DNA from: Chrysemys picta bellii
Taxonomy: Eukaryota
Assembly (NCBI RefSeq): GCF_011386835.1
Contig: NC_088794.1
Span: 86,738,001 to 86,802,000, forward strand
Reading direction: 5' to 3'
Length of the DNA stretch: 64,000 nucleotides
Shown one piece after another: positions 11,194 through 57,409 of the stretch (its first letter is position 1; every line of letters begins with the position of its first letter). A model generated the notes under the pieces. That model saw nothing but the letters and a program-made list of their open reading frames with translations, made no database searches and was not told the origin of the DNA. Made by a program: the position numbers and the translations under genes.

Positions 11194-11316
11194 AAGAGCT
11201 CTGTGTAGCTTGAAAGCCTGTCTCTTTCACCGACAGAAGTTCGTTCAATAAAAGATATTACTTCACCCACCTTGTCTCTCTTATATCCTGGGACCAACAG
11301 GGCTATAACACTGCAT
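11194..11316 (+). mobile_element. Penelope-like pLTR fragment, family B, 5'-truncated (hammerhead CUGA core missing)
   Basis: aagagctctgtgtagcttgaaagcctgtctc...aataaaagatattac...ggaccaacagggct. Homologous to the copy at 12139-12234. Confidence 0.75.
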
Positions 11317-11529
11317 GAAACAAAAGAAGGCACTTAACACTTTGGCCATTGCTACATTTTCATGCTAAGTTTGAAGGCACCTCTTTCACTTTAAACATTT
11401 GAATTGTAAAGTGAATCTCGTGCTGGAGAAAGGTGCCAGTTTCACAGCCTTGAATAATTGAAGTCCTCCGTTTTTTCCAACTCAACTTTCTAGAAAACCA
11501 TCTCATACTGAGAGCTAACTTTAATAGCA

Positions 11530-11642
11530 GTAAAAAGCAACAGAGGGTCCTGTGGCACCTTTGAGACTAACAGTCTCAAAGGTGCCACAGGACCCTCTGT
11601 TGCTTTTTACAGATTCAGACTAACACGGCTACCCCTCTGATA
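11530..11642. mobile_element. Penelope-like inverted insertion, family A1 (39-bp perfect hairpin plus 3' tail)
   Basis: Arms 11530-11568 and 11572-11610 are exact reverse complements with loop AAC, followed by tail agattcagactaacacggctacccctctga. Flanking duplication tttaatagcagt at 11520-11531 and 11643-11654. Confidence 0.85.
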
Positions 11643-11866
11643 TTTAATAGCAGTGATGACCAATTAGGAAACACAAAAATTATAATTATTTCTTTGTTAT
11701 AACAATCTATGGCCCACTAACAACCCCCATCCCAAGCTGCCTTTTTTCCTTCTTCTCTCCTCCTACCCCATGAATGGACCACTTCACCTTGAACAGTCCC
11801 TTAAAATATGTGTTAACTTCTTATACTAAACAGTCTGTTCTACCTTGTATTTAGCTGTGACAACCT

Positions 11867-12124
11867 GTGTATCGCTACACTGCAATTAAAAACCCAGGAC
11901 TGGCCTGTGCTAGCTGACTGGATCACACTAAGGGGCTATTTAATTGCTATGTATATGCTCGGGTTGGAGCCCAGGCTCTAGGACCCTGTGAAATGGCTCA
12001 GGATGCAGCCCAAGCCCAAACGTCTACACTGCAATTAAACAGCCCCTTAGCCCAAGCACTGTGAGCCTGAGTCTGCTGGCATGGGCCAGACACAGGTTTT
12101 TAATTGCACTGTAGACATACATTC
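11867..12124. mobile_element. PIF/Harbinger-type MITE nested in a Penelope-like element
   Basis: Inverted termini ctacactgcaattaaaaacc / ggtttttaattgcactgtag, plus an internal inverted repeat ctaaggggctatttaattgc / gcaattaaacagccccttag. Confidence 0.7.
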
Positions 12125-12138
12125 TGAGTACATTTCCC

Positions 12139-12178
12139 AGACCTGAGGAAGAGCTCTGTGTGGCTTGAAAGCTTCTCT
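12139..12178 (+). ncRNA. Minimal type I hammerhead ribozyme motif (family B), with a mismatch at the first base pair of helix I
   Basis: AGAC CUGAGGA A GAGCU CUGUGU GGCUU GAAA GCU U | CUCU. Core and helix II (with G-U pairs) are intact. Helix I 3' strand is CUCU instead of GUCU. Confidence 0.6.
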
Positions 12179-12239
12179 CTCTCACCAACAGAAGTTGGTC
12201 CAATAAAATATATTACCTCTCACACCTTGTCTCTAGAAC

Positions 12240-12880
12240 TAATTTATATCAATCTTTGCAGGCAGCTTTCCTAACAAAAAAGTGCCCATATGTGAACAGG
12301 ATGTGGCTAGACAAATTACTGCAGAGGAATGGGGTTTTATCTGGAAAAGAGGACCAGCAACATCAGTAGGTAGCACAATAAAAGAAAATGTCTTTAAGGT
12401 ACTATTCCAATGGCACCTCACACTAGTCAGGTTAAAATAGAGAGCGAGAGATTAAATGGTGATAAATGGTGAAGAAATTGTGGTGAAAAAGATGATTTTA
12501 ATGCATATATGGTGGATAAGACCAGTCATTAGAAAGTATTTGGATGCAGTCTGTAACAAAATACCACAAATTGTTAAATGTTTATTACCAAATGATCCGT
12601 TGGTAATCCACTTGGGCTTCTTATTGGAAATGGTCAGGCACAAAGAGAAAAAGAATTAATCTCTCACCTTCTAGCAAATGCTCAGCTATTGGTAACCTTT
12701 CATTGAAAAAAGAAAAATAGCCCAACTATGGAGGAATGGTTTAAATAAAAAAGTGGGGGAGGTTGTGGTTTTGGAAAAATTAACACACCAATTATATACC
12801 CAGCAAAATAGACAGAGGACAGATAGATACATAAATATTTGGTTATCTTTTATTCAATATTCAGACAAAGTGCATTCACT
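12240..12880 (+). mobile_element. L1-clade LINE ORF2 C-terminal fragment (decayed)
   Basis: Manual translation across stops and frameshifts: EQDVARQITAEEWGFIWKRGP..S...IKENVFKVLFQWHLTLVRL / DK*.RNCGEK / LMHIWWIRPVIRKYLDAVC...LPNDPLVIHLG / LISHLLANAQLL..H*KKKNSPTMEEWF. This matches the recalled vertebrate L1/Tx1 ORF2 C-terminal pattern. Confidence 0.75.
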
Positions 12881-14129
12881 TGCAAAAACAAAACTACACC
12901 TGTCCAGTTTTTTAAATGTTAACATTTGATATTCAACAGACCTAGTATGTCTATGTGTAATCGGAGATTTCACTCCATTTAATAAAATCACTAGGAACAA
13001 TTTTGGGGTTTTAATGATGTTGACTCTGTAATTTGGCAACACCCTGTTAAATAGGAAGATCTGATGATGACTGTAATCCTGTAGAATATCTCTTTAAACA
13101 AAAGCTCACTGTTGTAATGATTATTTGTTTCTGAAATTTATATGGCAAAGATTTATAAACATGTAAGAACTTCCTAAATAAAGTTTTATTTTTTTATTTT
13201 TAAAGTGCAGCATGAGCAGTAGCAGAACAAGCTTTGCCTATGCTGCCCTCTGCCAGGGGGACCTGAAGGGACGACCGCCAGGGGTTGGAGAGGAGTGCAC
13301 TCTCTGTGCCCTATTCACTTTCTGCTGTGAACAATCAGCAATGTGCCATCTGCAGCGCTGTCTTGCTGGGAATTGCACTGATATACTCCACCTCATTTCC
13401 CACCGGTGACAGAACAGCTATCAACTCTTAAGAGCTTTTTGATCACTATCACAGTCATTCCATTAGAAATCCTGCCATCACATTCAAGCTTCTCTTTGCC
13501 TTTAAGACCCTTCACAAATCTGCTCCTCCCTGCTCATTCGTTCTTGTTTCTTATCACATCTAGCCTCCATTTCATAGATTTTTAGGGCCAGAAAGAATCA
13601 CTGTGATCAGTTAGTCTGCTTCTTCAACAAATGGCTCCGTGCTTTCTTTCAGGATGCCCCTTGTACATAAAATGCTGTCGTTGAATGAATCTGTAAAGCC
13701 ACTAATCTCGCCTCCTTCCTATCCCTTCTCTACAGCCACTTCTGCTGTGATATTTACAAGAAATCAGCTAAGCAATGAAGGCTAGGTGGTGTGGTGCTTG
13801 GGGCTTAGATGGATTTTATAAACACTTAGATGATTTAGAACCACTGTGTTGTGCAATTGCTAATCTGTGTAACTATGTAATCTTATTATTTCTTGCATCT
13901 CCCCCTCACACTTCCTTTCTGTTTGTTACTCACATGTTGCATCTTGTATACAACAGAATGTAAGCACTTCAGGGTAAGCGCTGCAGCTTCCTATACAGTT
14001 GCAGAGTGCCTAGCAGGATAGGGTCTGATTTCATTTGGGGCCATTGGGCATTACCAAAATCCAGCAAAAGAGAAATGCAGGCCTTGTTTTGGAATCTTTT
14101 AATCCGCAAGGAACCTCAGGGGTTAGGTG

Positions 14130-14587
14130 TAGAGCTAGTTGGAAATTTTTCAGTGGGTCATTTTCCCATGGGAAAATGCTGATTCACTGCTGTTGAAATG
14201 TTCCCTGGGAACATGTGAATTGCCTCAGATCTTCCTCAGAACATAGGCAGGTTTCAAAACTAGCATGGATTCTTGCCATCCTTAGTAGCCTCAGTGGCAG
14301 ACTGCCCTGGAGTTGGGACGCTTGGGCATCCAGGCCCTATGGCTGCACTGCAAGGCATCTGGGAGCCAGGGCCGAGCTGAGAGCTTCTTGGAAGCCAAAG
14401 CTCTGAAGATATTTTGATTAGAAATTTTCTAAATGAAACATTCTGGTTATTTCAAAATGTTTTTTTCAGAATTGCCCTTCTGCAGGAAATTTTGAAGTTG
14501 CTACTTATCATTTTGAAAGTGACTTTTTTCTCCAAAAATGTTGGAATTTCTCACAGAAAGGGGCATTCTGACTTTCAAACAACTCTG
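14130..14587. mobile_element. Old hAT-type non-autonomous element
   Basis: Degenerate TIRs tagagctagttggaaa / tttcaaacaactctg. Flanks gttaggtg / gttaggaa match at 6 of 8. Confidence 0.55.
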
Positions 14588-15896
14588 GTTAGGAATTGAG
14601 GGGGTTGTCACTTGAGGCACATGTATAGGGATAATGTCTCCACAGAATTTGCTGGGAGTTATGTACATTGGTGTGGCTAACACTGCTGTCAGTTGATAAG
14701 TGCACAGTTACCTGGTTCATTCCCAGCACAGCTGATAATTGTGGGCAGTTGAGTTTTCATTAGTGATTGTCACAAGGCTCAAAAAAGCCCAGTTATGGTC
14801 TGTCTGGTGAACTAGTTGCTAGTGCAAAGTATGGCCTGCAGGAGGCCTGTGTTCAGTTTCTGGCCCCAGTCTCCCATTGTGTGGACTAGATGCCTATTTA
14901 GAAAAATACGAGAGAAGAGAGAACGTTGACTTGGTCTCGGGTTAGTCCCTGGGATGAATAATTATCTAATAAATATGGAGTGTATCTTATCAGTAAAGAA
15001 TGGCTTTCCTCTGAGAGCACCACAACACAGCTCTGGGAATGCTGGCTGTGCACTGGAAGGGGTGCAGTTTTAGTCTGGACTGAACACCAGATGCACCTGC
15101 ACAGCAAAGCTGGCTACCAGAAGGGGGTGCTGCTAGATGGACACATCTACCTGAGTGTTTGGTCACTAGTGGGCAGGCATGCAGCAACAGGACTTGAACA
15201 GAAGCAGTTGTGACTTTGAGAGAAGGTGCTTACTGCATCTTTCAATGCTTCTCTTGCTGAGTTTTATTTTGTAAGGCCTCAGAACATTTTGAAAAGACAT
15301 TTCTGAACTTACTGGAAAGAAAGACCTGAGTATGCAGACAGCATTGGGGCTGCGGGAGTTCTCAACCAACAGAATGCAAACACAGCTCCTGCGGGGGGGG
15401 GGAGTTAGAAAGCCTTATAGAAATGACCTAGAAGAACCTCAGCCCTGGACTGTGTCCTCCTGGACTCCCCGACCCCTCTCCTCTCCAGACAGTGATAGCT
15501 CCCTGTGCCTTGTCTTCCCTGGATAGGAATAGTTCCTCTGATCCTTCTCATAACTCCTGTCCTCCCTCAGACACTGTTCTGGCCTCCCCCCACCCCATCT
15601 CCTACTCCTAACTCTAACTAGCAGGTGTATATATCAGTTTTCTCTTGAAATCATGTGAAAATGGAGGAATGATATGAAAACTCATTGGCCCAGGTCTCTC
15701 AGCTGTGCTGAGGAGAAACCAAGTAACAGCACATAGAATAACTGCTGGCAGTTCCCCTGATCACCGTCAGGAACATTAGTGACATGCACTGCACTGAAGC
15801 TCTCAGTGGTGATGTTACACCTACACACGTCTCAGGCAACAACCCTATTGCCCTCAAATCCTCAGAGTTTCTTGGTTGATTAAATCATTCTTAAGT

Positions 15897-16025
15897 TGGG
15901 GTCTGAATGGCTCAGAGAATTTTCCAATGACTTTGTAGTCTTTCACTTGTAGGTCAACCAGTTTGATATTGACCCAAAGTCTGCAGCACCTGAAGGCTGG
16001 TCAGCGGCCTATGTAAAATGGTATG
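15897..16025 (+). mobile_element. LF-SINE-like fragment (5' part)
   Basis: atggctcag...ctttcacttgtaggtc...cagcggcctatgtaaaatg resembles the LF-SINE 5'/core sequence as recalled. No alignment was run. Confidence 0.55.
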
Positions 16026-16589
16026 GCTTTGCAGGTATCCTGCCCTCAGCTCCCTCTGGCTTCTTGCAATAATTCGCTCCCATGCCAGAATACTTAAAGT
16101 AAGATCCCCCTAGTTGGTATCATTTATTAATTCTTATTGGCACTTTGTCCACCCAGTTCCAAACCTTGTTCCATGTAAATCAGGAGCCCTACAGCCATGC
16201 TTCTTTGGCTTGTGCTGTGATTTAAAGCAGGGGTTTTTCTCCATGACTGAGGAGTCGCACGGCCCCCTGCTGGGGGGCTATACTGTAATTAGAGCCAGTT
16301 TCCAGCTCTACTTCACAAAGCACCTCTTCTCTCCTTTGGTTCAGGGGGGCCCACAGCCCTCCTGAGGCTCTGCTTGGCAGACAGGCAGTCTCCTTTCTGA
16401 GCTGTCTGCCTTTCCTCCTCCTTTTAGCTTTCTGGGGGCTTCTCTCTAGGTCTGGACTGACTTTTAAGCACATGACCTACCTGTTATGTGGCTACACTAA
16501 TTTTTCCTACCTAAGGAGGAGGAGGAGGGTTGAATGAGTCATAGGTGAGGCTGGACTCATTACCTCATAAAGGGGCCAGTCGCCCTTTG

Positions 16590-16732
16590 ACAGTGGGTCT
16601 CAGTTCATTGACTAGTGGGATAGGTGTGCACTTCATAAAAAACATCATGACAGTGGGCGCTGGTTGGTCATCTTAATGGCTCTCATATAAGAGTGAGTGG
16701 GCCATGGGCACTCATCTGTCTTCCTTATGTTC
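16590..16732 (+). mobile_element. LF-SINE-like fragment (central/3' part)
   Basis: gtgggtctcagttcattgactagtgggataggtgtgcacttcataaaaaacatcatgacag...gtgggccatgggcact resembles the LF-SINE core as recalled. Confidence 0.55.
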
Positions 16733-18262: not shown

Positions 18263-18820
<558 letters not shown>

Positions 18821-18944
18821 ACAATAACCCAATGCCACACTTAGTGAGAGAGCCCAGCCACATCCCAGACTGGTCTCAAAGACTGATACATCCTGTACGA
18901 TACACAATCCCCTTTATGATGAGGGCATGCATGGGATATAGCAG

Positions 18945-27418: not shown

Positions 27419-29110
27419 TGGACCTTCCCTGCATTTAAATGCCTTGGGCCCCTGCTGAACGTTGATTAAACTCTTAACCAGTGTACATTTAAACTTCTTA
27501 ATCCAGTCCAATCTTGCCCATAGAAAGACATTTGTCTCTTGATACCAACAATGGTACAATTAGTAGCTGTTCTTGACAGTTCACTTTTACTGGCATTTCC
27601 CTAGTATTCCTATCCGCTGTGTGGTATAGTTTGTTTTCTGAACCACAATACTGCATTGTAGCTTACATATTCTGAATTAGCTTTTGTTATATTTTCCTAA
27701 TAATGTTTGATTGCAGTCCTATTAACTATTTCTATTTATCTTTATATTATGACCCCAGTCGTGATCAGGGACACGTTGTGCTAGGCGAATGAGCACTGAA
27801 AGCTCCCTAGAAGTGAGGGGGCCACCGGTGCCCGAAGCCCCACCCCACCTGTTCCCCAAAACCCTGCCCTTGCCGCACCTCTTCCCATGAGGCCCTGCCT
27901 CCCGCTTTCTCCTCTCTGACTCCTACACCCCATCGCTTGCCTTTAAGGCAGGTAAAAAGTGGGAGGGTATAGCCTTCCCACTTTCAAAAGTTCTGGGGCC
28001 ATGTCCCTCTGCCTCCCAAGCCCCCATCCCATTCTGGCACCCTTGGCTAGGCACAGTACTGATACATAGAAAGACACAGTTGTTGCCCCAAAGATTGTAC
28101 AGTCTAGTGTTTATGCCATTTCATTACCAGGTAGAGTTGTACATACTATGTGGCTAGCTTCAATCCAGGGTATGCCAATGTAATCCCAGGAAAAAAGTCT
28201 GCTGCAGGGAGATTGTGGCAGTGTGAAGACAGCTAGGGTACAAGAAGCACAAAACAGCTGGGATTTAGTGTACTATGTAGGGCAGATAGCACTTATAAAA
28301 CCTGGGGCTCAGAACATTTTGATGTCTACATGTTGAGTTACTGCTTGACAAGCCAGGGTGTGAATCTACAACACACCAGCTTGCCACACACCAACTCACC
28401 ATGTGAACATTGCTACTGTGCAATGAAAGTCCCAGAGTGCAGCTAGTTGCTGTGCTGTAAATTTGCCATGTAGAAAAGAGACAAGTTCTTGCTGCACGAG
28501 TGGAAGGAAGAGCTTTGTCTCCTATACTAAGTGTCTCCATGAGGTTTTTGTTGTTTTATGAAGGAGCTCTGGATGTCCACCTTCATGGTGACCTTCCCTG
28601 CATTTAAATGGGTGCTTTCCACTTTTGTCCAATGTAATGTTGCATATACCTTTCTTGTTTCTCTGCAAAGCCTCCTTACTCTAATTCCTGGGCCTGCTTT
28701 GGAGCTTGTACTGTACATTTCTGGTTCCGATACTGTGTTAGACATGCTAGGCTCCTGGAACAGCATCAGCCTGTGTAGTTATCAAAGTTTACAACTGAAA
28801 ACAGACAAACTCTGCATCAGAAAAGGGCTACACTGGCAGCAAGCTGAACAAAATTTGTTGGTAGGCAAAACTGGCAAGCAAAGGGGACAGCCAGTTTATA
28901 GCAGAGTGGTGTCTGATTCCAAACAAGATAGCTGTGCCCATTGTGTCTGCCAGCCCACCCCATCTTCCTCAAAGGAGTACTCTCAGGTGAAGATTTTGAG
29001 TCAGGAGCAATCAGCCAGGTTAGCGGATATACCGTGGTGACCATCTGCTATATCAATTGGTGTTGTTGCTGTTACTGAGCCCACTATATGTCACTGCTTC
29101 TGTTGTAGGT

Positions 29111-29230
29111 TTCAAAGTAGCAGCCGTGTTAGTCTGTATCCACAAAAAGAACAGGAGTACTTGTGGCACCCTAGAGACTAACAAATTTATTTCAGTATAA
29201 GCTTTCATGGGCTACAGTTCACTTCTTCCA
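29111..29230 (-). mobile_element. Penelope-like pLTR, family A2, 5'-truncated inside the hammerhead core
   Basis: gtagcagccgtgttagtctgtatcc...aaaaagaacaggagtacttgtggcacc...aagctttcatgggctacagttcacttcttc. Homologous to 47823-48033. Confidence 0.85.
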
Positions 29231-32050: not shown

Positions 32051-32055
32051 TCTAG

Positions 32056-34283: not shown

Positions 34284-34305
34284 TGTGTGTGTGTGTGTGT
34301 GTGTG
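34284..34305 (+). repeat. (TG)11 microsatellite
   Basis: Read directly from the sequence. Confidence 0.95.
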
Positions 34306-42520: not shown

Positions 42521-44322
42521 AATATCATTTGAAGTCCAAGTTCTGGTGGCCAGACTTTCCCCACTGTGCTATTCATCTCCAGGAGAAAAAAGGCCCCGTG
42601 ACATGGTGCACGGGCACTGCCTGCTTCCCAGTATACAAGAGGTTATCTCCAGCTTCCTCTGCCCCATTCCTTGTACAGGTATCAGGAGACGGGCTATAAG
42701 AAGAGATGCTGGGGAGGCAGAAGAGGGAAAATATCTGTGAGAGAATACAGTTAGTTCTCTGTTTCTGTTTCTGTTATATTTGTTTTTACATAAAGTAGGT
42801 TGTTCTTAATGCATGATGATAAAGATTTTCTCCCTCTCACAAGAAATCCTTGGTGATTATTGTGCTGTCACCCCACCAGTTTACAGCCTCCTCATCTAAG
42901 AGGACTTTAATACAGAGCTATAAAAAGCCCCCAGACATAAATAAGGACTGCTGCTGTCCCTTTAATCAAAAAAAAACTAAAGGAAGAAGCTCTTAGAGGG
43001 CAATCTGCTTAGAAGAGTAAAGGCTAAATGTGGAATAATCCTTGAGGCCTCTTATTTAGCCTGTTGTGCTTTGGCCAAAGAGTAAACACAACTCTCCCTC
43101 TAATCAGTAGTCCTTGTTCAAAGCTGTAATATGTGAGTTGGTCGGTCACCCTGTGGGCACAACATGCATTTTCTTGTCTAGCAGCAGCAGCTGTTCTGGT
43201 TTGCTTTAGCAAAGGGGCGGGATATACAAAGGTTCTTTTTTAAGAAAGTAGATCACTAATGAGAAACGCAAAACTTATTTTTGGTGGGAGATGCAAGATG
43301 CAACTTAATAGTGATGCACTAAACAGTGGACAACCCATACTTCCAGTCCTCTGCATGTTGGGGTGGAAAGCAGGGAACTGCCCCATCTGGAAAAATCATC
43401 TGTTTCTGCAGGTCCCACTTTGAGAGGCGCCCCTATTACTTATTATTTGTACTACCATAGGGCCGAAGAGCCCTAGTCATGGACAAAGACCCCATTGTGC
43501 TAGGTACAGTACAAACTCAGAACCAAAAGGATGGTCTCCCAGGGACAACTGCAGTCAGGGGAAGCCCTGGTGACATGGCTCTGCTCGACCTCGCTCCCTG
43601 GCTGGAGTGTGGCAAACCCCCGACCCCGCTCCCTGGCAGGAGCTGAGGAGGCGGGATCCAGGGTCTTGTAGCTGGTGTGCCCGTATAGAGCCTCCTGCAC
43701 ATTACTGGCCTCCTGTGGAGATGTGCAGGACTGGGAATACATCTGCATCTCATTCGGGGAGGATGGCTGTCAGGAGAATACGGCTCTTCCCTCGTGGAAC
43801 AAAGTGGATTCCTTTGTGGAATTTTTCATTCTCGTAGGTAACTTCTGGTGGGTTTTATCCCAGGAAAGCTTGATCTGGCCTGTAATGATTTCCCAGTCCA
43901 GGAGAATGTATTTTCTCCTCCATAAGAATATGCTAGGTATTGGTCAAATAGACATCTCCAAAGAACGAGACTATGTCTAGACAGCAAGAACAAACTGGAG
44001 AATGATCCACCCTCTGAATTTTGTAACTGAACTGGTTTTGGTCTGCCTACACCAGGTCTGTTTCTGCATTGACATGAATACATTGAATAGCACTGGCTCG
44101 TGCAAGGTCCATGGGATTACTCTCATGAACAAGTGGTACTCAGCAGGAGTCAGAGCTGCAAAACTGGGTACTTAGATAATAAGCTCTGTGGTAGGGTCCA
44201 TGCGTCTTCTGAGCATGTGCTGAAATGCTCTCCTCCCACACTGTATAACTCTAAAATAATAATGAATAATTAGAAGATAATCTTGAGAGAGATAATGAAT
44301 AGGGAGTCTGAGATTTACCCTT

Positions 44323-44525
44323 AAAAAAGCAACAGAGGGTCCTGTGGCATCTTTAAGACTAACAGAAGTATTGGGAGCATAAGCTTTCATGGGTAAGAAC
44401 CTCACTTCTTCAGATGCAAGTGAATTTGACTTATGCTCCCAATACTTCTGTTAGTCTTAAAGGTGCCACAGGACCCTCTGTTCCTTTTTACAGATTCAGA
44501 CTAACACGGCTACCCCTCTGATACT
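44323..44525. mobile_element. Penelope-like inverted insertion, family A1
   Basis: Antisense pLTR arm (44323 to about 44420), then sense arm and tail. 14-bp TSD tgagatttaccctt at 44309-44322 and 44526-44539. Confidence 0.9.
44377..44417 (-). ncRNA. Minimal type I hammerhead ribozyme motif (family A1)
   Basis: Minus strand GCAU CUGAAGA A GUG A GGU UCUU ACC CAU GAAA GCU U | AUGC. The first pair of helix II is a G-U wobble. Confidence 0.75.
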
Positions 44526-45239
44526 TGAGATTTACCCTTGTTTTTTAATTGGCTGAATAATCTGAAACTTTTTGCTACTGCGTAAAATTGTTTGCTGAAG
44601 ATACATGTGGCAGGCTGCCTTGGGTTACCGAGAGAAACTGATGTGCTGATTCCTTTTCAAGAATTTGCTGAATGGGTACTGTCCTTTACATAGCAGGAGC
44701 CCAGCAAAGTCCTCCAAAAGATGAGGGATTTACACTGACAAAAGCTGTTAAGTATTCCACCCTCCACCATTCAAATCAGGCTGATTCCCCATTGGTTTGC
44801 CCTTGGGCATGCTACTTACTATTAAATTCTTGATGGTAATTGATCTGCTTGATATTAGAACACTTTGCTCCTACAAAATCTCATTTGTTGTTGCTGTTAT
44901 ACTTTGTTTCTTTGTGACAATCTTCCTCTGGAGCCTTAGTTTAGTAGAAGCTCCTTGAATTAGTGCAGTGAGACTCAATGTTCATGCAAGTAACTCTCGG
45001 CTTTATTATCACCATTTTATTATTTGTATTCCAATAATAGCATCAGGAGGCTCCAGCCAAGATCAGGGCCCCCTTGTGCCGACCACTGTATATATACATA
45101 GTGAGAGAGAGTACCTGCCTTGAAGAGTTCAGTCTCTAATAGGACAAGACAGGAAAAAAGGTGGGAAGGGAAACATAGGCACAGAGAGATTAAGCTACTT
45201 GGTCAAGGTCATACAGAAGAGGCACAGCTGATATTAGAA

Positions 45240-46021: not shown

Positions 46022-47096
46022 CTGGGGTGGCCAAACCATGGCCGAGCCGCATGTGGCTCTTTGACAGTTAAAGCGTGGCTCACGAAGCCCCCATGCCGCT
46101 CTCCTTTCTCCACTTATCAGACTGGGGGAAGGGGGGAGATTGGGGCTTCTGCCCTGTAGCGTGGTGATGGCTTCTGCCAGAGACCACTGGTGCCTGCTGA
46201 GAGTGGGGAGGCACAATTTAAAGGTTTGGACACCCCTCCCCCCAACAGCTTAAGCCACGCCTCTCCCCTCCCCCCCTTTAGCAGCCGCTCCCAGGTGTTA
46301 GCTCCCAGTGAAAAGGCAGCAGCAAACAGCTGGGAGCTGCAGGGAGAAGCCACTGCTTTAGCTCCATGGAGAGAGGGAGCAGCAAAAGCAGTGGCTCTCC
46401 CTGCAGCTCCCAGCTTGCTGGCTCCAGCAGCTGCCCTGCAGGGAGGGGCCCCGGCAGCTGCACCATGTGACCTAGTGGTGCCAGCAAACCCTGGCAAAAC
46501 TCTGCGGGACATGGCCACTGCCTCTTCTGCACAGTGGGAAGGCGGGGATCGGAGCTTCAGCCCTGTGGAAAGTGCCTGCCACAGCTTGGAGCTTCACATC
46601 TATGGGAGATGCCTGCCGGGGCTTGGGACTTCAGCAGGAATGAGGCTGAAGCCCTGAGCCCCAACAGGCGCCTCCCACAGGGCTGAAGCTCCAATACCCC
46701 CCTTCCCACTGGGCAGAAGCCCTGAGCCGTTGCAAGAGCCTCCTGCAGGGCTGAAGCCTCAAGACCCCTGGCAGGCAGGTGCTTGCCATGGGGCTGAAGC
46801 CTCAAGATCCCCCTCCCCGCAGGGCTGAAGCCATGAACCTGGCAGGTGCCTCCCCTGGGGCTGAAGCCCGGGAGCCCCCCAGTTCCCTCAGGGCAGAAGC
46901 CTCTAGCCCCACCACCCTATTGTGGAACTGAAGCCCTGAGCCTCCGACCAGCAGGTGCACCTCCTGTGGGGCTGAAGTCCTGAGCCCTCCCACTCCCAGC
47001 AGGGCTGAAGCCTTGAGCCCCAGCATGCGCATCCTGGCTCTTGAACCTCTGAAGATTATATGTGGCTCAGAGGGTCAGTAAATTTGGCCACTCCTG
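46022..47096. mobile_element. hAT-type non-autonomous element with an internal GGGCTGAAGCC repeat array
   Basis: TIR CTGGGGTGGCCAAAC / ATTTGGCCACTCCTG. The TSD is degenerate. About 11 GGGCTGAAGCC-like units at 30-45 bp spacing between about 46640 and 47020. Confidence 0.75.
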
Positions 47097-47822
47097 AGGT
47101 AGACGAACACATGATCTGGTACACAAGGAGACACTGCTGGCCAAAACCAGGCTAGATTTGGCAAATGTAGAATGAATATAAAATAAAAATGGCAAACCTT
47201 TCACCTTTTGACAGCCAGGCACCTCTAGCCTATCGGAATATAGCAGCTCTCATTAACTCATGGGCATATCAGAATTTATTATTCCTTTTGGCTACTGGAT
47301 TAAATTATTGTGCATGGCATATTATATGTGGAGTTGGCACTGCCTATTACAGTTGCCCAACACTTCCCATTATAAGACCCTGTTTTCAGTTGCTTATAAT
47401 TTTGCTGAAATTTGGGCTAAAATATTCCATACCAGCTAAATTATAAGCTGATCTAGTGAGTGTGATCATGTCTCCCTTTAGTACTGGTCCTAGCAACTAC
47501 ACAGCCTTCCTATTGCTACCTCTCTTTGAATAGTGGGGATGCTGAAAGCCAGCTCCCTTACTCCTGTCTGCCCCCCCACTCCCTGGAGCTGGCAGCCACG
47601 ACCTGGGGGTGGGGACCCATGGCACCGGGGGCCAGGAGTGGAACCCCAGCTAAAAGCTGAGGGTTCTGCAGCACGCCCTGCACCCTAGTTCCCGTGCCTA
47701 TGCTCGTAAAGTAAAGGAGTTCTCTTTTAGCTTGAGCATTAGGGATCTGTGCTTTTGTTGTTGAAGGCCTGAGGTCCCATGCCTACTGATGACCATGGTG
47801 TCTGTATGTGTATGTGAACTTA

Positions 47823-48033
47823 AAAAGAACAGGAGTACTTGTGGCACCTTAGAGACTAACAAATTTATTAGAGCATAAGCTTTCGTGGACTACAGCCCAC
47901 TTCTTCGGATGCATACCATGTGGGCTGTATGTCCACGAAAGCTTATGCTCTAATAAATTTGTTAGTCTCTAAGGTGCCACAAGTACTCCTGTTCTTTTTG
48001 CGGATACAGACTAACACGGCTGCTACTCTGAAA
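47823..48033. mobile_element. Penelope-like inverted insertion, family A2
   Basis: About 78-bp near-perfect inverted arms (about 47822-47900 and 47920-47999), tail gcggatacagactaacacggctgctactctgaa, and 12-bp TSD tatgtgaactta at 47811-47822 and 48034-48045. Confidence 0.92.
47873..47912 (-). ncRNA. Minimal type I hammerhead motif, U4C core variant (family A2)
   Basis: Minus strand GCAU CCGAAGA A GUGG GCUGUAGU CCAC GAAA GCU U | AUGC. Confidence 0.6.
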
Positions 48034-48900
48034 TATGTGAACTTAGTTTGTTTTGCACACCCATATTTTAAGGGCCAGAATAAGGGCCCTAACTGCTGGA
48101 GGCATATGATTGTCAGAATCTTAAGAAAAACTTGAAAATCTGACCCAAATGTAACCAACACAGTGATATCTGTCTGACGCTGCAGATGGCCTGGAATAAT
48201 AGCTCTGAGAGGGATGAACTGCCCTATGCATCTTAATGGGGTGTTAACGGCAAACTCCACTGCTCTGGGAGAGCCCTGCTAACACCACCTTACACTGGTG
48301 ACTATGTGACAGGAGAAGAATGCTGTAAATCCAGCCTATGCCCCATGCAGATACCCCCAGATACTGGAGTAAGTACTGGGGGATTCACTACTGCTGTGGC
48401 TGTCCTGCCTTTCTGGAGGAAGAGAGAGAACCCTGCTTCTCCTGAGGTGAGGGGGAAACCTGCATCTGGAGAAGATAAAGAGACCTGTGCTACTGCCACT
48501 GTGGGAGAAGTGGGGGGGGAGGGAGGAGGGGGAGGGCTTCTTACTGACATGCCTAGTGGGCAATGGGGCTGTGATATGGTGTCCCAGATTGCCTTAATCT
48601 GGCCCTGGGTATCTCTATACCCTGCCCACTCCAATATGCACACAGCTTTCCCTCCCTTGTCCAACCCTTTTCATTTCAAGTCTGTCTTAAAGTCCATTTT
48701 TGATTGCAGACTTTTTTACTACCCTAGGTGGCACTCTTTCTCCATTTCATCTCTGTATATTTGACATATTGCTTGCTCTTTTACCAATTCCTTAAATCTT
48801 CTGTGGTATTTCTCATTGAAAACAACTCCTTTATTTCTTAGTGTGAACTCCCTGTTTCATTAACTCTTTTTGATTGTATATTTGTTAGATTTCTCATGGC

Positions 48901-49605: not shown

Positions 49606-49668
49606 TCTCAGCCTTACTCATGGCCTCTTGCTATGTCATATCTTTCACCATGTTTTTATGACTTGCTG

Positions 49669-51989: not shown

Positions 51990-52480
51990 TCATACACCCA
52001 GAGGAGAACGGGCTGTGGGCGGGCCGCCGCTCACGGTGCGAGCCTCCCCAGAGAACTACAACTCCCAGCACGCCTCGCGCTTGGCTGAGCCATAGCGCTG
52101 CAGCTTATTGGTCGGTGGCTTAGGGTAACGGGCCAATCGCTGCCCTCGATGTTGCTCTGTGGCTCCACCTCTTGCTCGGGGAAGTGGGAGACTTTGAAAA
52201 AGTTGCCAGGTCAGGGCGCGGGGCCGTTGTGGCGGTTGGATGGCGGAGCCCGGAGGGAGGGGCTCGGCGGCTCCAGGGCAGGAGGAGGGGGCTGCAGCCA
52301 GCAGTCGCCGGGCGGGACATGGGCAACCTGGGATGGCGCGGGAAGGCAGCGGGGCGCCCTGCAGTGTGTGGGAGGGACATTCCCGCACTATCCCACGGGG
52401 GAAGTGGGGTCAGGGCAGAATGAGGGGCGCCCCCCCCAGCCCATTCTCCTGGGGGCGCTGGTGTGTGTATGTGGAGCGAC
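51990..52480 (+). promoter_or_regulatory. RAD51B: CpG-island promoter, probably of RAD51B, with two CCAAT boxes and a CHR-like element
   Basis: The only non-repeat CpG-dense stretch in the window, about 2.7 kb upstream of the first RAD51B coding exon. ATTGG at 52107-52111, CCAAT at 52133-52137, TTTGAA at 52193-52198. Possible non-coding exon-1 donor CAG|gtcagg at 52209/52210. Confidence 0.75.
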
Positions 52481-52651
52481 CAGGGCTGCCCAGGTGGCGG
52501 AGGGGAGGGGCAAGTGGGACAATTTGCCCCAAGTCCCTCAGGAGCCCCCACCAGAATATAGTATTCTATAGTATTGCAACTTTTCTTTTTAATGGAAGGG
52601 GCCCCTGAAATTGCTTTGCCCCGGGCCCCCTGAATCCTTTGGGCAGCCCTG
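52481..52651. mobile_element. hAT MITE, 171 bp, at the edge of the CpG island
   Basis: TIR CAGGGCTGCCCA / TGGGCAGCCCTG. Perfect TSD ggagcgac at 52473-52480 and 52652-52659. Confidence 0.92.
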
Positions 52652-52878
52652 GGAGCGACTTGCTCATTACCGCCTTCTGGGCCATGCAAGAAGTGGGGGG
52701 TAGGTAGGGAGGCCTCTCTCCCCTGGGGTCATTCACAAAGGAGAGGTAACAGCTGGATGATGATCCCCATAGATGCACTTGCAGAATCCGCGCCATAAAC
52801 CCTGTCTGCACTGGCAGCATTAGGACCTGTAATTCACTATCGGTGCAGCCCCGCTGGTGGAAACTGGGATTAAACTGA

Positions 52879-53137
52879 GGCTATGTACACATTACATCTT
52901 ACCTTGGTATGAGTTACCCTCCCCCCTGAGTGATGTAAATTACATGACCTAAGTGCTCGTGTGGATAGCGCTATGTCTGCAGGAGCGCTTCTCCCATGGA
53001 CATAGCTCCAGCTCCTCTCAGTGGCTGGAGTAAACAAGTCAGTGGGAGAACTCTCCTGTTGGCTTTAGAGTATCTGCTGTAACAGTACTACAGTGGCACA
53101 GCTGTGTCGCTTTAAGCGCTGTAGTGTAGCCATAGCC
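52879..53137. mobile_element. PIF/Harbinger-type MITE (related to 9957-10206)
   Basis: GGCTATGTACACATT / AGTGTAGCCATAGCC termini with tga/tca flanks. Shares agcgctatg...ttctcc...actctcctgttggc internals with the 9957 element. Confidence 0.75.
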
Positions 53138-53699
53138 TCAAGTGTTATTTTTGTACCATAGCATCATCTGAGTAGGGTTAAATAACGGGGTGGAAGTAAC
53201 ACTTGAGTCCTGTCTACAGGTTCTACTGTAGGAACTGCATCAGTGATGAATTATGGGTCCTGTAGATGAAGCCCTAATGTCGCAAGGCAAACATGGCAAT
53301 GAATTTTCAGGATCTCTTGGCTTTCTGGAACTCCCTATCAGTATTTTCCTTCCTCCTTGTTTCCCTGCTAAGCTGTTTCATTCTTTTTTTCTTCCAGGCT
53401 GCTTTGGAAGTAGCTCTTGTCCCTTTGCCTGGTGCCATATCGTGTGCCAAGGGTTATGGGTAGCATTTCTGTGTCTAATTGTTTTCTTCTCTTCCTGAAA
53501 CAAAGCAGAGTAACAGAAGATCTGATCAGACACCTGGGTTTTGCAATAGCAGTATGTGAGATACATGAGAGCCAGTTGCTACTCTAGAGCTATGAGCTGA
53601 GTGTGTGGATGTTATATTAAAACGAAAAATTATTTACTAATTTGATCCTTTTCATCACTGTCCTTTTAACATCCTGCAAATCCTATTCTACAATCAACC

Positions 53700-53995
53700 T
53701 TCACTTCTCAATCTCCAGGACACTTACTGCTTTCTTGGCAGGACACTGAACATGTAAAGATGTATATATCTCCTCTATGGCTGCAGGAGAAATTTAGCAC
53801 TTCAACAATAACATTTTGATGCAGCCAAATGACAAAGATATATGTTGTGAGCTCTGAGATTCTATAGTGATATACATAACAGTGAACTCCACTGATGATT
53901 TCTGCACTGCATGAGTATTCACACAACACTAACATAACCCTGTGGCTTGACCCACCAGGCACCAAGATCAGTGATACCTGAGAGACATTCAGAAG
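53700..53995 (-). pseudogene. Highly decayed hAT transposase fragment (CxxH region)
   Basis: Frame-hopping manual translation LVGQ...EYS...EIISGVH.YVYHYR/AHN.YLCHLAASKC/EVLNF/AAIEEIY resembles the hAT pattern GQGYDGA..MSG...GVQ..I......YVHC.AH.LNL. Recognised by eye only. Confidence 0.45.
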
Positions 53996-54276
53996 AGCCA
54001 GTCTCTTTGAAATCCTCGTTACGAACCCACAGGGAATATCCTCAGGATATTATGTGTGAAAGAACAAAATGATTGAATATATGTGTAGATAGGAAGACAA
54101 ATGTGTATAGATGCTTTATACGATCTGTTACATCTGCTTTTCAGTTGCCAGGCATACTGGTATCTTTTATGCCCTGGTTGAGAGATTAGAAGAACATGAA
54201 AAATGGTACAGTTGTAATATCCCAGCTAATTACTAGATTTAAAGGCTGGGCCATTGTTATCTTCAAGTCTGAGGTG

Positions 54277-54982
54277 CATAACACAGGTCATAGGACTTCC
54301 TTGAATTCCTTCTTCGAGTTCAATAGCTATGGCTGAACTAGACCATATCTTTTAGAAAAACAACTGATACGGATTTAAAAATTGCAAGCAATAAAGAATC
54401 CACCACAACCCCTGGAAAGATGTTCTAATGGTTAATTACCCTCACTGTTAAAAACATGCACCTTATTTCTAGCCTGAATTTGTCTAGTTTCAACTTTCAG
54501 CTATTGGATTGTGCTATACCTTTGCCTGCAAGATTGAAGAGCCTCTATTATCAAATTTCTGTTCCCCATTTAGGTACTTACAGACTTTGATCAAGTCACT
54601 CCTTAACTTTCTCTTAGATAAGTTAAATAGATCAAGTGCCTTAAATCTCTCACTGAGGTATGTTTTCTCATCCTTTAATCATTCTCGTGCCTCTTTTCTG
54701 ACCTCTCTAATTTCTCAGCAACCTTGAATTGTGGACACACTATTCCAGTAGCGGTTGCACCATTGCCAGATATTCTCTACTTCTACTTGATATTACCCTA
54801 CTTATACATCCAAGGATTGCATTAGTCCTTTTAGTCACAGTGTTGCAGTGGGAACTCATGTTCAGATGATTATCTGCTATGACCCCCAAAATCTCAGTCA
54901 CTGCTTCCCAGAATGGAGTCACTAATCATGTATGCATGACCTGCTTTCTTTGTTCCTAGGTGCATGGCCTTGCATTTGGCTA
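54277..54982 (-). mobile_element. Old CR1 LINE fragment in RAD51B intron 1
   Basis: gaatccaccacaacccctgg, ttaattaccctcactgttaaaaa, and minus-strand HLNMSSHCNTVTKRTNAILGCISR. Confidence 0.8.
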
Positions 54983-55199
54983 TTTATGGGTAATTGTTAT
55001 TTAACAGGAGTTGCTCTGTGACCACTTACACACTCCAATAGTACAAAGATTTGTAATGTGTGATATGTTCCCATTCTTTAGAGTAGAGTGTGTGTTTGTG
55101 TTTTTGTGCTGGTATTGTTTGTGTTGGTATTGCAAACAGCTTTTCTAGATTTGTTTTGCTGTACTATGATTGTTTTTTCTGTTCACCAGATGTGGGAAC

Positions 55200-55283
55200 A
55201 TGGCCACTAAGAAATTAAGAAGAGCAGGGTTATCTCAGGAACTTTGTGACAGGCTGAGTCGGCATCAGATCACTACCTGTCGG
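55200..55283 (+). CDS. RAD51B: RAD51 paralog B, first coding exon (codons 1-28)
   Basis: MATKKLRRAGLSQELCDRLSRHQITTCR versus human MGSKKLKRVGLSQELCDRLSRHQILTCQ. Acceptor ...gttcaccAG at 55188-55189, donor GTGAGA at 55284. 84 coding nt, phase 0. Not in the ORF track because it is spliced. Confidence 0.95.
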
Positions 55284-56105
55284 GTGAGACTTTCGCTTAA
55301 TAGATATAGAGATTTATTTTATGTTGGGTTATGAGTCTCTGACACATGAATGGCCTGCTGCCTTGTAAAGGTGTAGTCTTGAATGTGTGCAGAAATATAA
55401 CTTCCCAACAGGTTCATACTTTACATTTATATAGAGCCTTTCATCCCAAAGATCCTAAAGTAATGTAGAGATCACTTCTGTCACCAATGAAATTCAGCTG
55501 CCACTTGGGTGGAGCAAGACAACTGTTTAACCAAATACAGCAGCACAATACAACAGGAAGTGAAGATGGTCATATTAAACTGAAACTAGTAGTGGTGTTT
55601 TCTCATTCTCTTCTCACACCAGAATTGTTAATTTGGTGACTTTATCCAATACAGGGTGATTCAGGGCTAGATCCTGCAAATGTTTGTATGAATGGATCCT
55701 TAAGCAGAGCCAGGGTCTCTGTGCAGAGGCTGCAGTCCTCTGACATGAATCCAATTGTAGGATCTGGCCCTAAGTCTGATAATTAGAAAATGAGACATTG
55801 TTTGATGTGGTCTGTGATCATTTTTCAGTTAAGGACAGAGGCTTGTGAGAGAGGCAATATTGTTTCATCCCACCCCAATATGACAATTGAATATTTAATT
55901 TTTTCCGCTCTCCCCACTCCCACCCAGCCCTTTAAAATGTGAGGCAAAATTAATGCCTTGTATAATTCTATTGTCTTGAGTGGAATTGCACCATGGGGGA
56001 ATTTGGAATATGAACTGATTGTTTATAAATATATTAAATGAATGTAATCTCTTTTCCCCCCTTCAATCCCCAGATTGAACTCTGTTCCTTTTAATCATCT
56101 TTCAG

Positions 56106-56219
56106 GACTTTCTGTGTCTTTCACTCTTGGAGTTAATGAAAGTGACCGGGCAAAGTTATTGGAATGTACAGAAACTTCTTTGCAAAGTCAGCTTAGCTTG
56201 TGCTCCCAAAATGCAGACT
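56106..56219 (+). CDS. RAD51B: RAD51 paralog B, second coding exon (codons 29-66)
   Basis: DFLCLSLLELMKVTGQSYWNVQKLLCKVSLACAPKMQT. Bounded by ttcAG and GTAAGT. 114 nt, phase 0. Confidence 0.95.
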
Positions 56220-57196
56220 GTAAGTATCCTTGTGGTGATCCTGTTATGAAATCTGACTACAGTCACTTTTCTTTTTACCTATCAAGGTATAGTATAGTAT
56301 AGGTTTGTTGCAAATAAAATGAGATGGCGTGCCATCCAAGATGTAAACAGTGGAATTCCATTATAAGGATCAAGTCAGGCTATGCCTGTGTTCATTGCTA
56401 AATTCAGATCCAAAAGACAATGAATTTCTCAGTTCAGATGTGTATAAAAAGAAAATCTCTTTCTTGTCAGAATACAGTGAGTTCAGCTATGCGTTTTAGT
56501 GCTTAAGCAGGTTGCTCAGGTTATTACAATAGGATATAAGTAGCACTCCTATAAGTGACATATGTATGCTGAGAGCCACTCAAGAAGATGAGAAATTCTT
56601 TCCTACCTCTGAGAATATCAAAGAAATTGCTTCCAATCTGAGCCTTACAACTGAAAGTGCCATTGATTAGTGTAGGTGAAGGGTAGGAACATCAGTGCCC
56701 ATAGAAACTGTTTTTTAGAAAGTAATGTTAGTGCCAAAGAGCAGAGTGATCATTAAAGCTATATTCTGCTCATTTTGGAGAATTTCGTATTCTCTCATTC
56801 TAGGCAAATGGGAATGTGGAGTGGCATGAAAGTGATGCATCTAGTGTTAGAGTTGGTGGGAGTGGAGGGAGGGAGACAGGAGGTGTGGACTACACTGCTG
56901 TTGACTGGATTCTTGTGGCTACTCTAAGAGAATAAGTCTGAATTAGACTGTTGTTGTCCTCCCAACCATAAAGAAAAGATGCTAATGATAGTAGCCTGCT
57001 TGTGGCAGGAGGGGGAGATGGGGCAGAGAAAACTGGGTGTCAAGACAGTGCAGGTCCAGGTAACGTTCACTGCAGTTTAAGAGTTGGCCAAGGAGCTCTC
57101 CAGATAATCAATGTGAATTTTTAATAAATCTTGGGTAATAAATCTTGGGCAACTGGGGAAGTTCCAGAGGACTGGAAGAAATCCAATGTTGTGCCA

Positions 57197-57409
57197 AGCA
57201 ACAGAGGGTCCTGTGGCACCTTTAAGACTAACAGAAGTATTGGGAGCATAAGCTTTCGTGGGTAAGAACCTCACTTCTTCAGATGCAAGTAAAGAAGTGA
57301 GGTTCTTACCCACGAAAGCTTATGCTTCCAATACTTCTGCTAGTCTTAAAGGTGCCACAGGACCTTCTGTTGCTTTTTACAGATTCAGACTAACACGGCT
57401 ACCCCTCTG
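57197..57409. mobile_element. Penelope-like inverted insertion, family A1, nested in CR1
   Basis: 83-nt arms 57197-57279 and 57292-57374 (80/83 complementary), then the tail. 12-bp TSD aatgttgtgcca at 57185-57196 and 57410-57421. Confidence 0.93.
57246..57286 (-). ncRNA. Intact minimal type I hammerhead ribozyme motif (family A1)
   Basis: Minus strand GCAU CUGAAGA A GUG A GGU UCUU ACC CAC GAAA GCU U | AUGC. All core nucleotides are present, helices I and II are Watson-Crick, and helix III is the palindrome AGCU. Confidence 0.8.

What the first reader, a model, noticed from the sequence alone, without database searches (positions are those of the whole stretch)
11194..57409. Minimal hammerhead ribozyme motifs in three Penelope-like families, supported by covariation inside this window
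Seen in sequence: four motifs share one type I architecture. 57246-57286(-) reads GCAU-CUGAAGA-A-GUG..CAC-GAAA-GCU-U|AUGC. 44377-44417(-) is the same with a G-U pair. 47873-47912(-) has a CCGAAGA core. 12139-12178(+) reads AGAC-CUGAGGA-A-GAGCU..GGCUU-GAAA-GCU-U|CUCU, and the sister family-B copy at 11194 has GUCU at that position. Helix I (GCAU/AUGC versus AGAC/GUCU) and helix II (GUG/CAC versus GAGCU/RGCUU) change sequence but keep pairing, while the core, an extra A after A9 and the AGCU palindrome stay essentially fixed. Established: Penelope-like elements carry minimal hammerheads whose short palindromic helix III is completed by dimerisation, and an extra A between A9 and G10.1 occurs in the CChMVd (+) hammerhead. 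Inference: these are turtle pLTR ribozymes cleaving after C-U-U. I cannot tell whether these particular families have been described.
Basis: partly seen in the sequence, partly recalled or inferred. Interest (0 to 1): 0.8.

Follow-up and report, generated by a model that had tools for sequence, protein, structure and literature searches.

The report
Penelope retroelement minimal hammerhead motifs
The motifs are real minimal hammerhead-ribozyme sequences carried in the 3' repeat of Penelope-like retrotransposons, a kind already described in 2014 (turtles included), and the copies in this window are dead, truncated insertion fragments.

Summary
Complete type I minimal hammerhead (HHR) motifs lie at 57246-57286(-), 44377-44417(-) and 47873-47912(-). 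A decayed one lies at 12139-12178(+), and a partial one starts at 11196. The genome holds 35,877 CUGANGA...GAAAGCUU motifs (reversed control 77). Helices I and II covary between two deep lineages.

In one family the motif sits about 190 nt downstream of an intact RT plus GIY-YIG ORF, so the Penelope-like element (PLE) link is direct there. For the other two families it rests on shared 3' architecture.

The window copies are about 200-bp inverted-repeat insertions with 11-14 bp target-site duplications and a 31-nt tail on one arm. This is standard PLE insertion anatomy.

All diagnostic traits were published by Cervera and de la Pena 2014, which mentions turtles: the extra base after A9, G10.1-C11.1, the AGCU palindrome and the dimer model. 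I therefore class the finding as already known.

Three things are new here:
- The youngest, most abundant family carries CCGAAGA (U4C) in its source copies, and 36,640 such motifs exist genome-wide.
- The 5' ends of insertions do not pile up at the predicted cut site. They pile up just 5' of helix I.
- Family A1 looks non-autonomous, at about 146-175 nt.

Cleavage itself was not testable. The scan also noted young Penelope/GIY-YIG insertions elsewhere in this genome.

The parts
57196..57409 (-). Family A1 insertion, inverted-repeat (hairpin) form. Target-site duplication (TSD) ggcacaacatt at 57185-57195 and 57410-57420.
57246..57286 (-). Complete minimal hammerhead (HHR): GCAU-CUGAAGA-A-helix II (6 bp with a bulged A)-GAA-AGCU-U|AUGC. 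It lies in the arm without a tail.
57291..57326 (+). Partial HHR on the tail-bearing arm. It lacks C3-G5, so the arm is truncated inside the core.
57379..57409 (+). 31-nt PLE tail, present on one arm only. It ends ...ACACGGCUACCCCUCUG.
44323..44525 (-). Family A1 insertion, hairpin form. TSD aagggtaaatctca at 44309-44322 and 44526-44539.
44377..44417 (-). Complete minimal HHR. C11.1 has changed to U by CpG decay, giving a G.U pair.
47822..48033 (-). Family A4 insertion, hairpin form. TSD aagttcacata at 47811-47821 and 48034-48044.
47873..47912 (-). HHR-like motif with a U4C core (CCGAAGA). This is the source-copy state of the young autonomous PLE family.
29108..29222 (-). A4-like, tail-bearing, 5'-truncated copy. 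Its partial HHR starts inside the core.
11532..11642 (-). Short A1 hairpin insertion that turns 24 nt downstream of the cut site, so it has no HHR. TSD actgctattaaa at 11520-11531 and 11643-11654.
11776..12233 (+). Family B copy without a tail, split by a roughly 263-bp unrelated insertion at about 11860-12122.
12139..12178 (+). Family B HHR: AGAC-CUGAGGA-A-GAGCU..GGCUU-GAAA-GCU-U|CUCU. It is decayed at 11.1 and at 1.1.
11196..11310 (+). Family B tail-bearing copy, 5'-truncated at helix II. It keeps GUCU after the cut site.

Best explanation
These are the minimal type I hammerhead (HHR) motifs that Penelope-like retroelements (PLEs) carry in their terminal repeat (pLTR). In the source elements the motif lies about 190 nt after the RT/GIY-YIG ORF and about 115 nt before the 3' end.

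The RNA forms helix I (4 bp) and helix II (5-6 bp, preceded by one extra base after A9). Helix III exists only when the AGCU palindromes of two motif copies pair, so any cleavage after C-U-U needs a dimer. By analogy with the anole element it probably also needs the PLE protein.

The copies in this window are products of retrotransposition, not working ribozymes. The PLE enzyme nicks both DNA strands and starts reverse transcription at two sites that bracket a 31-nt tail. This gives a 5'-truncated tail-bearing arm joined head-to-head to an arm without a tail, flanked by 11-14 bp duplications.

Shown here: the motif, its conservation, the covariation, the ORF link for family A4, and the insertion anatomy. 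Inferred: dimerisation, cleavage, the help of the protein, and the PLE origin of families A1 and B.
For: Motif and statistics. Thirteen of the 14 columns that never vary across the A and B lineages are the catalytic core, the AGCU palindrome and U17.

Covariation. Between the A and B family consensus sequences, 3 of 4 helix I pairs and 3 of 5 helix II pairs change on both sides.

PLE link: the ORF has RVT_1 plus GIY-YIG and a CX4CXXC linker. The unit repeats every 2,957 nt with one motif per unit, in tandem and inverted partial copies.

Tail on one arm only: 14 of 19 head-to-head A1 pairs have exactly one exact tail and none has two. A simple truncated copy with a tail and a TSD is at L024:1453-1627.

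Literature: the same traits are published for PLE min-HHRs, with turtles mentioned (PMC4209133). PLE insertion anatomy is in PMC8557442. Both strands being extended, two RT start sites bracketing the tail, and HHR cleavage that depends on the PLE protein are in PMC11167929.
Against: No Rfam hammerhead model matches. Cleavage was not tested.

The most successful family has C at the conserved position 4, and 36,640 such motifs exist. U4C is reported to lower activity considerably in vitro (PMC3088659).

The 5' ends of genomic copies do not accumulate at the predicted cut site: 2 of 100 for A1 and 3 of 100 for A4.

In the anole PLE, cleavage is not needed for insertion in vitro and no RNA-seq reads end at the cut site.

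No ORF was linked to families A1 or B. Helix I covariation rests on a single A-versus-B contrast.
Confidence: 0.87

Rival explanations
1. The hammerhead-like fold is kept as a non-catalytic RNA element, for example part of the 3' structure that the PLE reverse transcriptase or protein dimer recognises, or of the pLTR promoter or leader. On this view self-cleavage is vestigial or irrelevant.
For: The U4C state is carried by source copies: 95% of A4, 75% of A2, and 42% of A3 plus A5, with as many CCGA as CUGA motifs overall. There is no pile-up of 5' ends at the cut site. The shortest A1 form (about 146 nt) begins 3-4 nt upstream of helix I (7-8 nt before C3), so motif plus stem plus tail appears to be the minimal mobilised unit. 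In the anole PLE the HHR is dispensable for insertion. Naiad PLEs thrive without HHRs.
Against: Apart from position 4, every catalytic base (C3, G5, A6, G8, A9, G12-A14, A15.1-U16.1, non-G at 17) is invariant across lineages whose helices have been rewritten. That pattern is hard to explain without catalysis. The anole PLE HHR does cleave, and the C3/G8 rescue pattern is as expected for a hammerhead. A U4C viroid hammerhead remains functional in vivo.
Confidence: 0.1
2. The helices are an artefact of the inverted-repeat structure of the insertions, or the motif is a chance match in an abundant repeat.
For: All three complete window motifs sit in long inverted repeats, which also give weak miRNA-like Rfam hits on both strands.
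Against: Helices I and II lie inside one arm and are present in simple copies without an inverted repeat (L024) and in full-length elements. The reversed-pattern control gives 77 against 35,877. The ACGU-palindrome version is at or below its control, 586 against 3,440. Compensatory changes link the A and B lineages.
Confidence: 0.01
3. Families A1 and B are SINE-like elements moved by another machinery, such as the CR1 LINEs abundant in this genome, and only resemble PLE ends.
For: No ORF was linked to A1 or B. A1 has discrete 5' ends (about 146 and 175 nt), as a SINE would. CR1 reverse transcriptase ORFs lie nearby.
Against: A1 is about 75% identical to the A4 3' end over its whole length, tail included. 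The one-arm tail, the head-to-head arms and the variable 3' terminus are PLE signatures. There is no poly(A) or CR1-type 3' end. Being non-autonomous but PLE-mobilised fits a 2026 preprint on animal retrozymes.
Confidence: 0.02

Closest known systems
Minimal hammerheads of Penelope-like elements (Cervera and de la Pena 2014, PMC4209133; Lunse, Weinberg and Breaker 2017, cited in PMC6765202)
   Same: Type I layout; no closed helix III; palindromic 15.2-16.2; one extra base between A9 and G10.1; G10.1-C11.1; a long helix II; tens of thousands of copies in consensus families with compensatory changes; location in the pLTR. The 2014 paper states that similar motifs are conserved in turtle and snakes.
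   Different: Nothing of substance for the canonical-core copies. Searches that require CUGANGA would miss the U4C families, which make up half of the motifs here.
Anole Poseidon PLE (PAc) hammerhead and insertion mechanism (Frangieh et al. 2024, PMC11167929)
   Same: The tail is bracketed by two RT start sites, both DNA strands are extended, and the HHR lies in the pLTR. The one-tailed head-to-head insertions seen here are what that mechanism predicts.
   Different: In PAc the ORF starts inside the HHR. Here the first in-frame ATG lies about 125 nt downstream of the predicted cut site, about 15 nt past the tail. The clade also differs: the CX4CXXC linker here is Neptune/Nematis-type.
CChMVd (+) viroid hammerhead with an extra A after A9, and the U4C viroid hammerhead variant
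   Same: An extra base between A9 and G10.1 (paper cited in PMC4209133), and a natural U4C core that still works in vivo (PMC3088659).
   Different: The viroid ribozymes are type III with a closed helix III and loop-loop contacts. They are not homologous elements.
Animal non-LTR retrozymes (Cervera and de la Pena 2020; bioRxiv 10.64898/2026.07.22.740005)
   Same: Short non-autonomous PLE-derived units carrying a type I HHR. The mean reptile consensus length is reported as 176 bp, and A1 here is about 175 nt.
   Different: Retrozymes are defined by tandem arrays. None of 100 sampled A1 motifs has a same-strand neighbour within 400 nt. A1 copies are dispersed single or head-to-head insertions.

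Membership tests
Hammerhead ribozyme (type I) | Core C3-U4-G5-A6-N7-G8-A9 | tested here: met
   CUGAAGA at 57246 and 44377, and CUGAGGA at 12139. Not met at 47873 or in its whole family, which reads CCGAAGA (U4C).
Hammerhead ribozyme (type I) | G12-A13-A14, A15.1-U16.1, and a cleavage-site base that is not G | tested here: met
   GAA-AGCU-U is invariant in 15 copies from both lineages.
Hammerhead ribozyme (type I) | Helices I and II supported by compensatory change | tested here: met
   92% of cells paired against 76% in shuffles, and 7 of 10 pairs changed on both sides. Family B consensus.
Hammerhead ribozyme (type I) | Closed helix III within one molecule | tested here: not met
   Only the 4-nt palindrome AGCU is present, with no loop. 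Helix III can form only between two copies (sequence; model of PMC4209133).
Hammerhead ribozyme (type I) | Match to the Rfam hammerhead covariance models | tested here: not met
   No hammerhead family matched at gathering score or at E <= 10.
Hammerhead ribozyme (type I) | Mg2+-dependent self-cleavage | not testable with these tools
   The RNA runs found are contigs of guessed kind only. The genomic 5'-end proxy gave no signal.
PLE minimal hammerhead (min-HHR) | One extra nucleotide between A9 and G10.1 | tested here: met
   It is A in nearly all A and B copies and G in a minority.
PLE minimal hammerhead (min-HHR) | G10.1-C11.1 and palindromic 15.2-16.2 | tested here: met
   G-C in the consensus of both lineages; the G.U copies come from CpG decay. 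The AGCU palindrome is invariant.
PLE minimal hammerhead (min-HHR) | Located in the pLTR of an RT plus GIY-YIG element | tested here: met
   Shown for family A4. For A1 and B it is inferred from the shared 3' architecture only.
Penelope-like element (EN+, Neptune-type) | Single ORF with RT, a C-terminal GIY-YIG domain, and a CX2-5CXXC linker | tested here: met
   RVT_1 at 6.1e-11 and GIY-YIG at 8.7e-06 on a 918-codon open frame. The linker reads YPCNKPRCQLC.
Penelope-like element (EN+, Neptune-type) | Partial tandem (pLTR), an adjacent inverted 5'-truncated copy, and a 30-40 bp tail at one end | tested here: met
   (L061-L063). Window insertions. Tail on one arm only in 14 of 19 pairs and on both arms in none.
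Animal non-LTR retrozyme | Tandem arrays of HHR-bearing units | tested here: not met
   None of 100 sampled A1 motifs has a same-strand neighbour within 400 nt. The sample is small, the first 14 Mb of one chromosome.

The most novel reading that the evidence does not exclude
Position 4 of the hammerhead core switches between U and C in the source copies of these PLE lineages. The youngest autonomous family keeps C4, even though it sits in a hypermutable CpG whose decay would restore the canonical U. That family has at least 150 copies with an identical endonuclease region and open frames up to 919 codons. Together with the absence of insertion 5' ends at the cut site, this would mean that efficient self-cleavage is dispensable or even selected against. 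The conserved fold would then serve mainly as an attenuated, protein-dependent ribozyme or as a structural part of the minimal RT template.
Probability: 0.3. Interest if true: 0.55.

Novelty: already known. Interest (0 to 1): 0.28.

Why it matters
As a discovery it adds little. PLE minimal hammerheads, their dimer model and their presence in turtles were published in 2014, and turtle Penelope families are in Repbase (Penelope-2_CPB is named in PMC9004415).

The genome is nevertheless a good natural experiment on what PLE hammerheads are for. It holds about 36,000 canonical and about 36,000 U4C motifs. An apparently intact Neptune-type PLE carries the variant, and a short non-autonomous family carries the canonical core. 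Comparing their cleavage and mobilisation would test directly whether catalysis matters for PLE retrotransposition, which published work leaves unresolved.

Tried and rejected
- Rfam: no hammerhead hit at gathering score or at E <= 10. The only hits near the motifs are weak miRNA-like matches on both strands, caused by the inverted repeats.
- RNA evidence: the 22 runs listed are Logan contigs whose RNA or DNA kind is only guessed, and none is kept as raw reads. Read ends at the cut site could not be examined and read laying was not used.
- Insertion 5' ends as a fossil record of cleaved RNA: read by eye from two listings of 100 arms each. There is no pile-up at the cut site in either the canonical or the U4C family. 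The comparison therefore says nothing for or against activity. A few turns at -5 to 0 coincide with the AAGCUU palindrome or the GCAU/AUGC complementarity of helix I, and may be microhomology-driven template switches.
- Other helix III palindromes: the ACGU version is at or below its control, so no such family exists. AAUU and AUAU were not searched.
- RNAcofold of two motif copies prefers swapped helix II pairing over the AGCU helix III, so it is uninformative about the dimer.
- Link of family B to an ORF: no coding remnant lies upstream of it in the window by tblastx against the A4 unit.
- Host identification: an exact look-up of the 880-aa ORF found nothing. 'Turtle' remains unverified by tools, though a 2.37-Gb genome with a 360-Mb largest chromosome, CR1 LINEs and PLEs is consistent with it.
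- Lunse et al. 2017 is not held in the library, so it is cited only through PMC6765202.
Full report
**1. Observation**

I scanned with a descriptor of my own. It required:
- four helix I pairs;
- a C[U/C]GANGA core;
- an optional extra base;
- a helix II of at least 3 bp;
- GAA;
- a palindromic A-N-N'-U;
- then a base other than G.

It returns exactly 57246-57286(-), 47873-47912(-) and 44377-44417(-) in the window. It returns nothing in 200 simulated windows. The plain pattern CTGANGA..GAAAGCTT gives 3 matches against 0.06 expected.

Rfam has no hammerhead match, even at E <= 10. That is expected, because these motifs lack a closed helix III.

**2. What the window copies are**

Each complete motif sits in one arm of a roughly 200-bp inverted repeat flanked by a target-site duplication of 11-14 bp:

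| Element | Duplication |
|---|---|
| 57196-57409 | ggcacaacatt |
| 44323-44525 | aagggtaaatctca |
| 47822-48033 | aagttcacata |
| 11532-11642 (short relative, turns before reaching the motif) | actgctattaaa |

One arm always runs 31 nt further. This extra stretch, the tail, ends ...ACACGGCUACCCCUCUG. The complete hammerhead lies in the other arm, the one without a tail. The tail-bearing arm is truncated inside or near the motif.

Transcribed as a whole, such a copy folds into a hairpin of -155 kcal/mol that buries the motif. These copies are therefore insertion products, not working ribozymes.

**3. Genome-wide picture**

The genome has 2.37 Gb. It holds 35,877 matches to CTGANGA..GAAAGCTT against 77 for the reversed control. 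The same pattern with an ACGU palindrome is at or below its control, 586 against 3,440.

The matches fall into subfamilies that differ in helix II:

| Subfamily | Helix II | Matches | Window copies |
|---|---|---|---|
| A1 | GUGAGGUUCUUACCCAC | 13,537 | 57246, 44377 |
| A2 | GUGAGGUUUUUACCCAC | 7,618 | none |
| A3 and A5 | GUGGGYAUUCACCCAC, GUGGGYNNUAGCCCAC | 9,137 | none |
| A4 | GUGGGCUGUAGUCCAC | 26,674 | 47873, 29108-29222 |
| B (older) | GAGCU..AGCUC | 663 strict | 12139, 11196 |

**4. Link to Penelope-like elements (PLEs)**

In L003 a GIY-YIG ORF ends about 190 nt upstream of an A4 motif. At least 150 genomic copies encode this 154-residue endonuclease region identically, with open frames up to 919 codons.

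The 918-codon open frame of L062 matches RVT_1 and GIY-YIG. It has a CX4CXXC linker, which is the Neptune/Nematis type according to PMC8557442.

The unit repeats every 2,957 nt with one motif per unit. About 75 nt after each motif comes the tail (...ACACGGCUGCUACUCUGA). The first in-frame ATG of the next unit lies about 15 nt past the tail. Partial tandem copies and adjacent inverted 5'-truncated copies are both present.

This is the published PLE anatomy: pLTR, inverted 5'-truncated copy, and a 30-40 bp tail at one end (PMC8557442). It also fits the anole PLE biochemistry, in which both DNA strands are extended and reverse transcription starts at two sites that bracket the tail (PMC11167929).

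A tally agrees. Of 19 head-to-head A1 pairs in the first 14 Mb, 14 have exactly one exact tail and none has two. L024:1453-1627 is a plain 5'-truncated A1 copy with a tail and a duplication and no inverted arm.

A1 is about 75% identical to the A4 3' end over its whole length. B has the same layout and a tail containing ACACGGCU.

**5. Covariation**

On an alignment of 15 copies, 13 of the 14 columns that never vary are the catalytic core, AGCU and U17.

For the named structure:
- 92% of pair cells are paired, against 76.4 +/- 2.0 in shuffles (0 of 500 shuffles reach the observed value);
- 7 of 10 pairs change on both sides (6 of 500 shuffles reach this);
- slid controls give 24-49% paired.

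The family B consensus, from 100 sampled copies, is AGAC-CUGAAGA-A-GAGCU-loop-AGCUC-GAAA-GCU-U|GUCU. Compared with A, 3 of 4 helix I pairs and 3 of 5 helix II pairs are rewritten on both sides. The window's B copy owes its G.U pair and its C-C mismatch to decay.

Within A, helix I never varies. Only the sixth helix II pair covaries, U-A against C-G. The support is therefore real but rests on few independent contrasts.

**6. Comparison with what is known**

Cervera and de la Pena 2014 (PMC4209133) describe exactly these traits:
- a minimal motif with no helix III;
- a base between positions 9 and 10.1;
- G10.1-C11.1;
- palindromic 15.2-16.2;
- large consensus families with compensatory changes;
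- a dimer model;
- low activity in vitro.

They state that similar motifs are conserved in turtle and snakes. Turtle Penelope families are in Repbase (PMC9004415). The finding is therefore already known.

**7. What I did not find in the papers read**

(a) Position 4. The counts per 100 sampled copies are:

| Subfamily | CCGA | CUGA | CCAA |
|---|---|---|---|
| A4 | 95 | 2 | 3 |
| A1 | 0 | 99 | 1 |
| A2 | 75 | 22 | 3 |
| A3 plus A5 | 42 | 54 | 4 |

All 45 motifs next to the identical endonuclease copies read CCGAAGA. Genome-wide, CCGANGA..GAAAGCUU occurs 36,640 times against a control of 119. That is as often as the canonical form.

CpG decay should give CUGA and CCAA equally. The excess of CUGA in A2, A3 and A5 means that both states were carried by source copies.

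U4C is reported to lower activity considerably in vitro while a viroid carrying it stays infectious (PMC3088659).

(b) 5' ends. I read 70 nt upstream of the predicted cut site in 100 A1 arms and 100 A4 arms.
- Only 2 A1 ends and 3 A4 ends lie at the cut site.
- In A1, 33 arms start at -41 or -40, which is 3-4 nt upstream of helix I (7-8 nt before C3). These occur in hairpins and in simple insertions.
- In A1, 23 further arms belong to a discrete 175-nt form that starts at -80.
- In A4, about 28 arms start between -44 and -35.

One reading is that this is the 5' end of the template RNA, so that reverse transcription starting at the leader copy of the tail runs off the RNA end. This is inference only.

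(c) A1 therefore looks like a non-autonomous unit of 146-175 nt made of motif, stem and tail. This fits the recent proposal that animal retrozymes derive from PLEs, but here the copies are not in tandem arrays.

**8. Mechanism and confidence**

| Claim | Probability |
|---|---|
| The motifs are genuine PLE minimal hammerheads | about 0.87-0.9 |
| The canonical source copies cleave in vivo as protein-assisted dimers | about 0.5 |
| The U4C sources cleave at a useful rate | about 0.3 |

The main rival is that the fold is kept chiefly for a non-catalytic role. It is supported by the U4C data, by the 5'-end data and by the anole in vitro result. It is opposed by the strict invariance of every other catalytic base.

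Noticed in passing
window 57196-57409, 44323-44525, 47822-48033; L024:1533-1627; L062:1655-1748(-): A 9-bp stem pairs UGUUAGUCU, about 20 nt after the cut site, with AGACUAACA inside the tail (MFE folds). Family B has GUUGGUCC and GGACCAAC at the same places, so the stem covaries. It probably frames the AC-rich RT start region. Another first-stage note (s1-325691) is about this.
   Followed up: partly
G000:C1 (L031-L063), e.g. L062:1965-4718(-): At least 150 PLE copies have an identical 154-residue endonuclease region, with open frames up to 919 codons. This is a very young, possibly still active Neptune-type PLE with about 30,000 3'-end copies.
   Followed up: partly
G000:C1, listings: Insertion 5' ends pile up just 5' of helix I: at -41/-40 from the cut site in A1 (3-4 nt upstream of helix I) and between -44 and -35 in A4. 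A1 also has a second discrete end at -80. This may mark a transcript 5' end in the pLTR.
   Followed up: partly
window 46316-46421: A GC-rich near-perfect palindrome of about 100 nt gives sub-threshold Rfam hits on both strands (V_AS5, mir-3158, mir-1954). It is probably another inverted-repeat transposon fragment.
   Followed up: no
window about 11860-12122: A roughly 263-bp element with internal direct and inverted copies of CTACACTGCAATTAAA is inserted into the family B copy.
   Followed up: no
L024:931-2985(-), L003:22-2284(+): CR1-type LINE reverse-transcriptase ORFs (FADDTKL motif) are interrupted by A1 insertions. L024 and L025 share 3 kb at 97.6% identity, including the insertion.
   Followed up: no
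G000:C1:4897222-4897312(-) (listing): A short direct tandem: the tail-less end of one A4 3' unit is joined to a second unit that starts 11 nt before the cut site. Same-strand repeats of this kind are rare in the samples.
   Followed up: no
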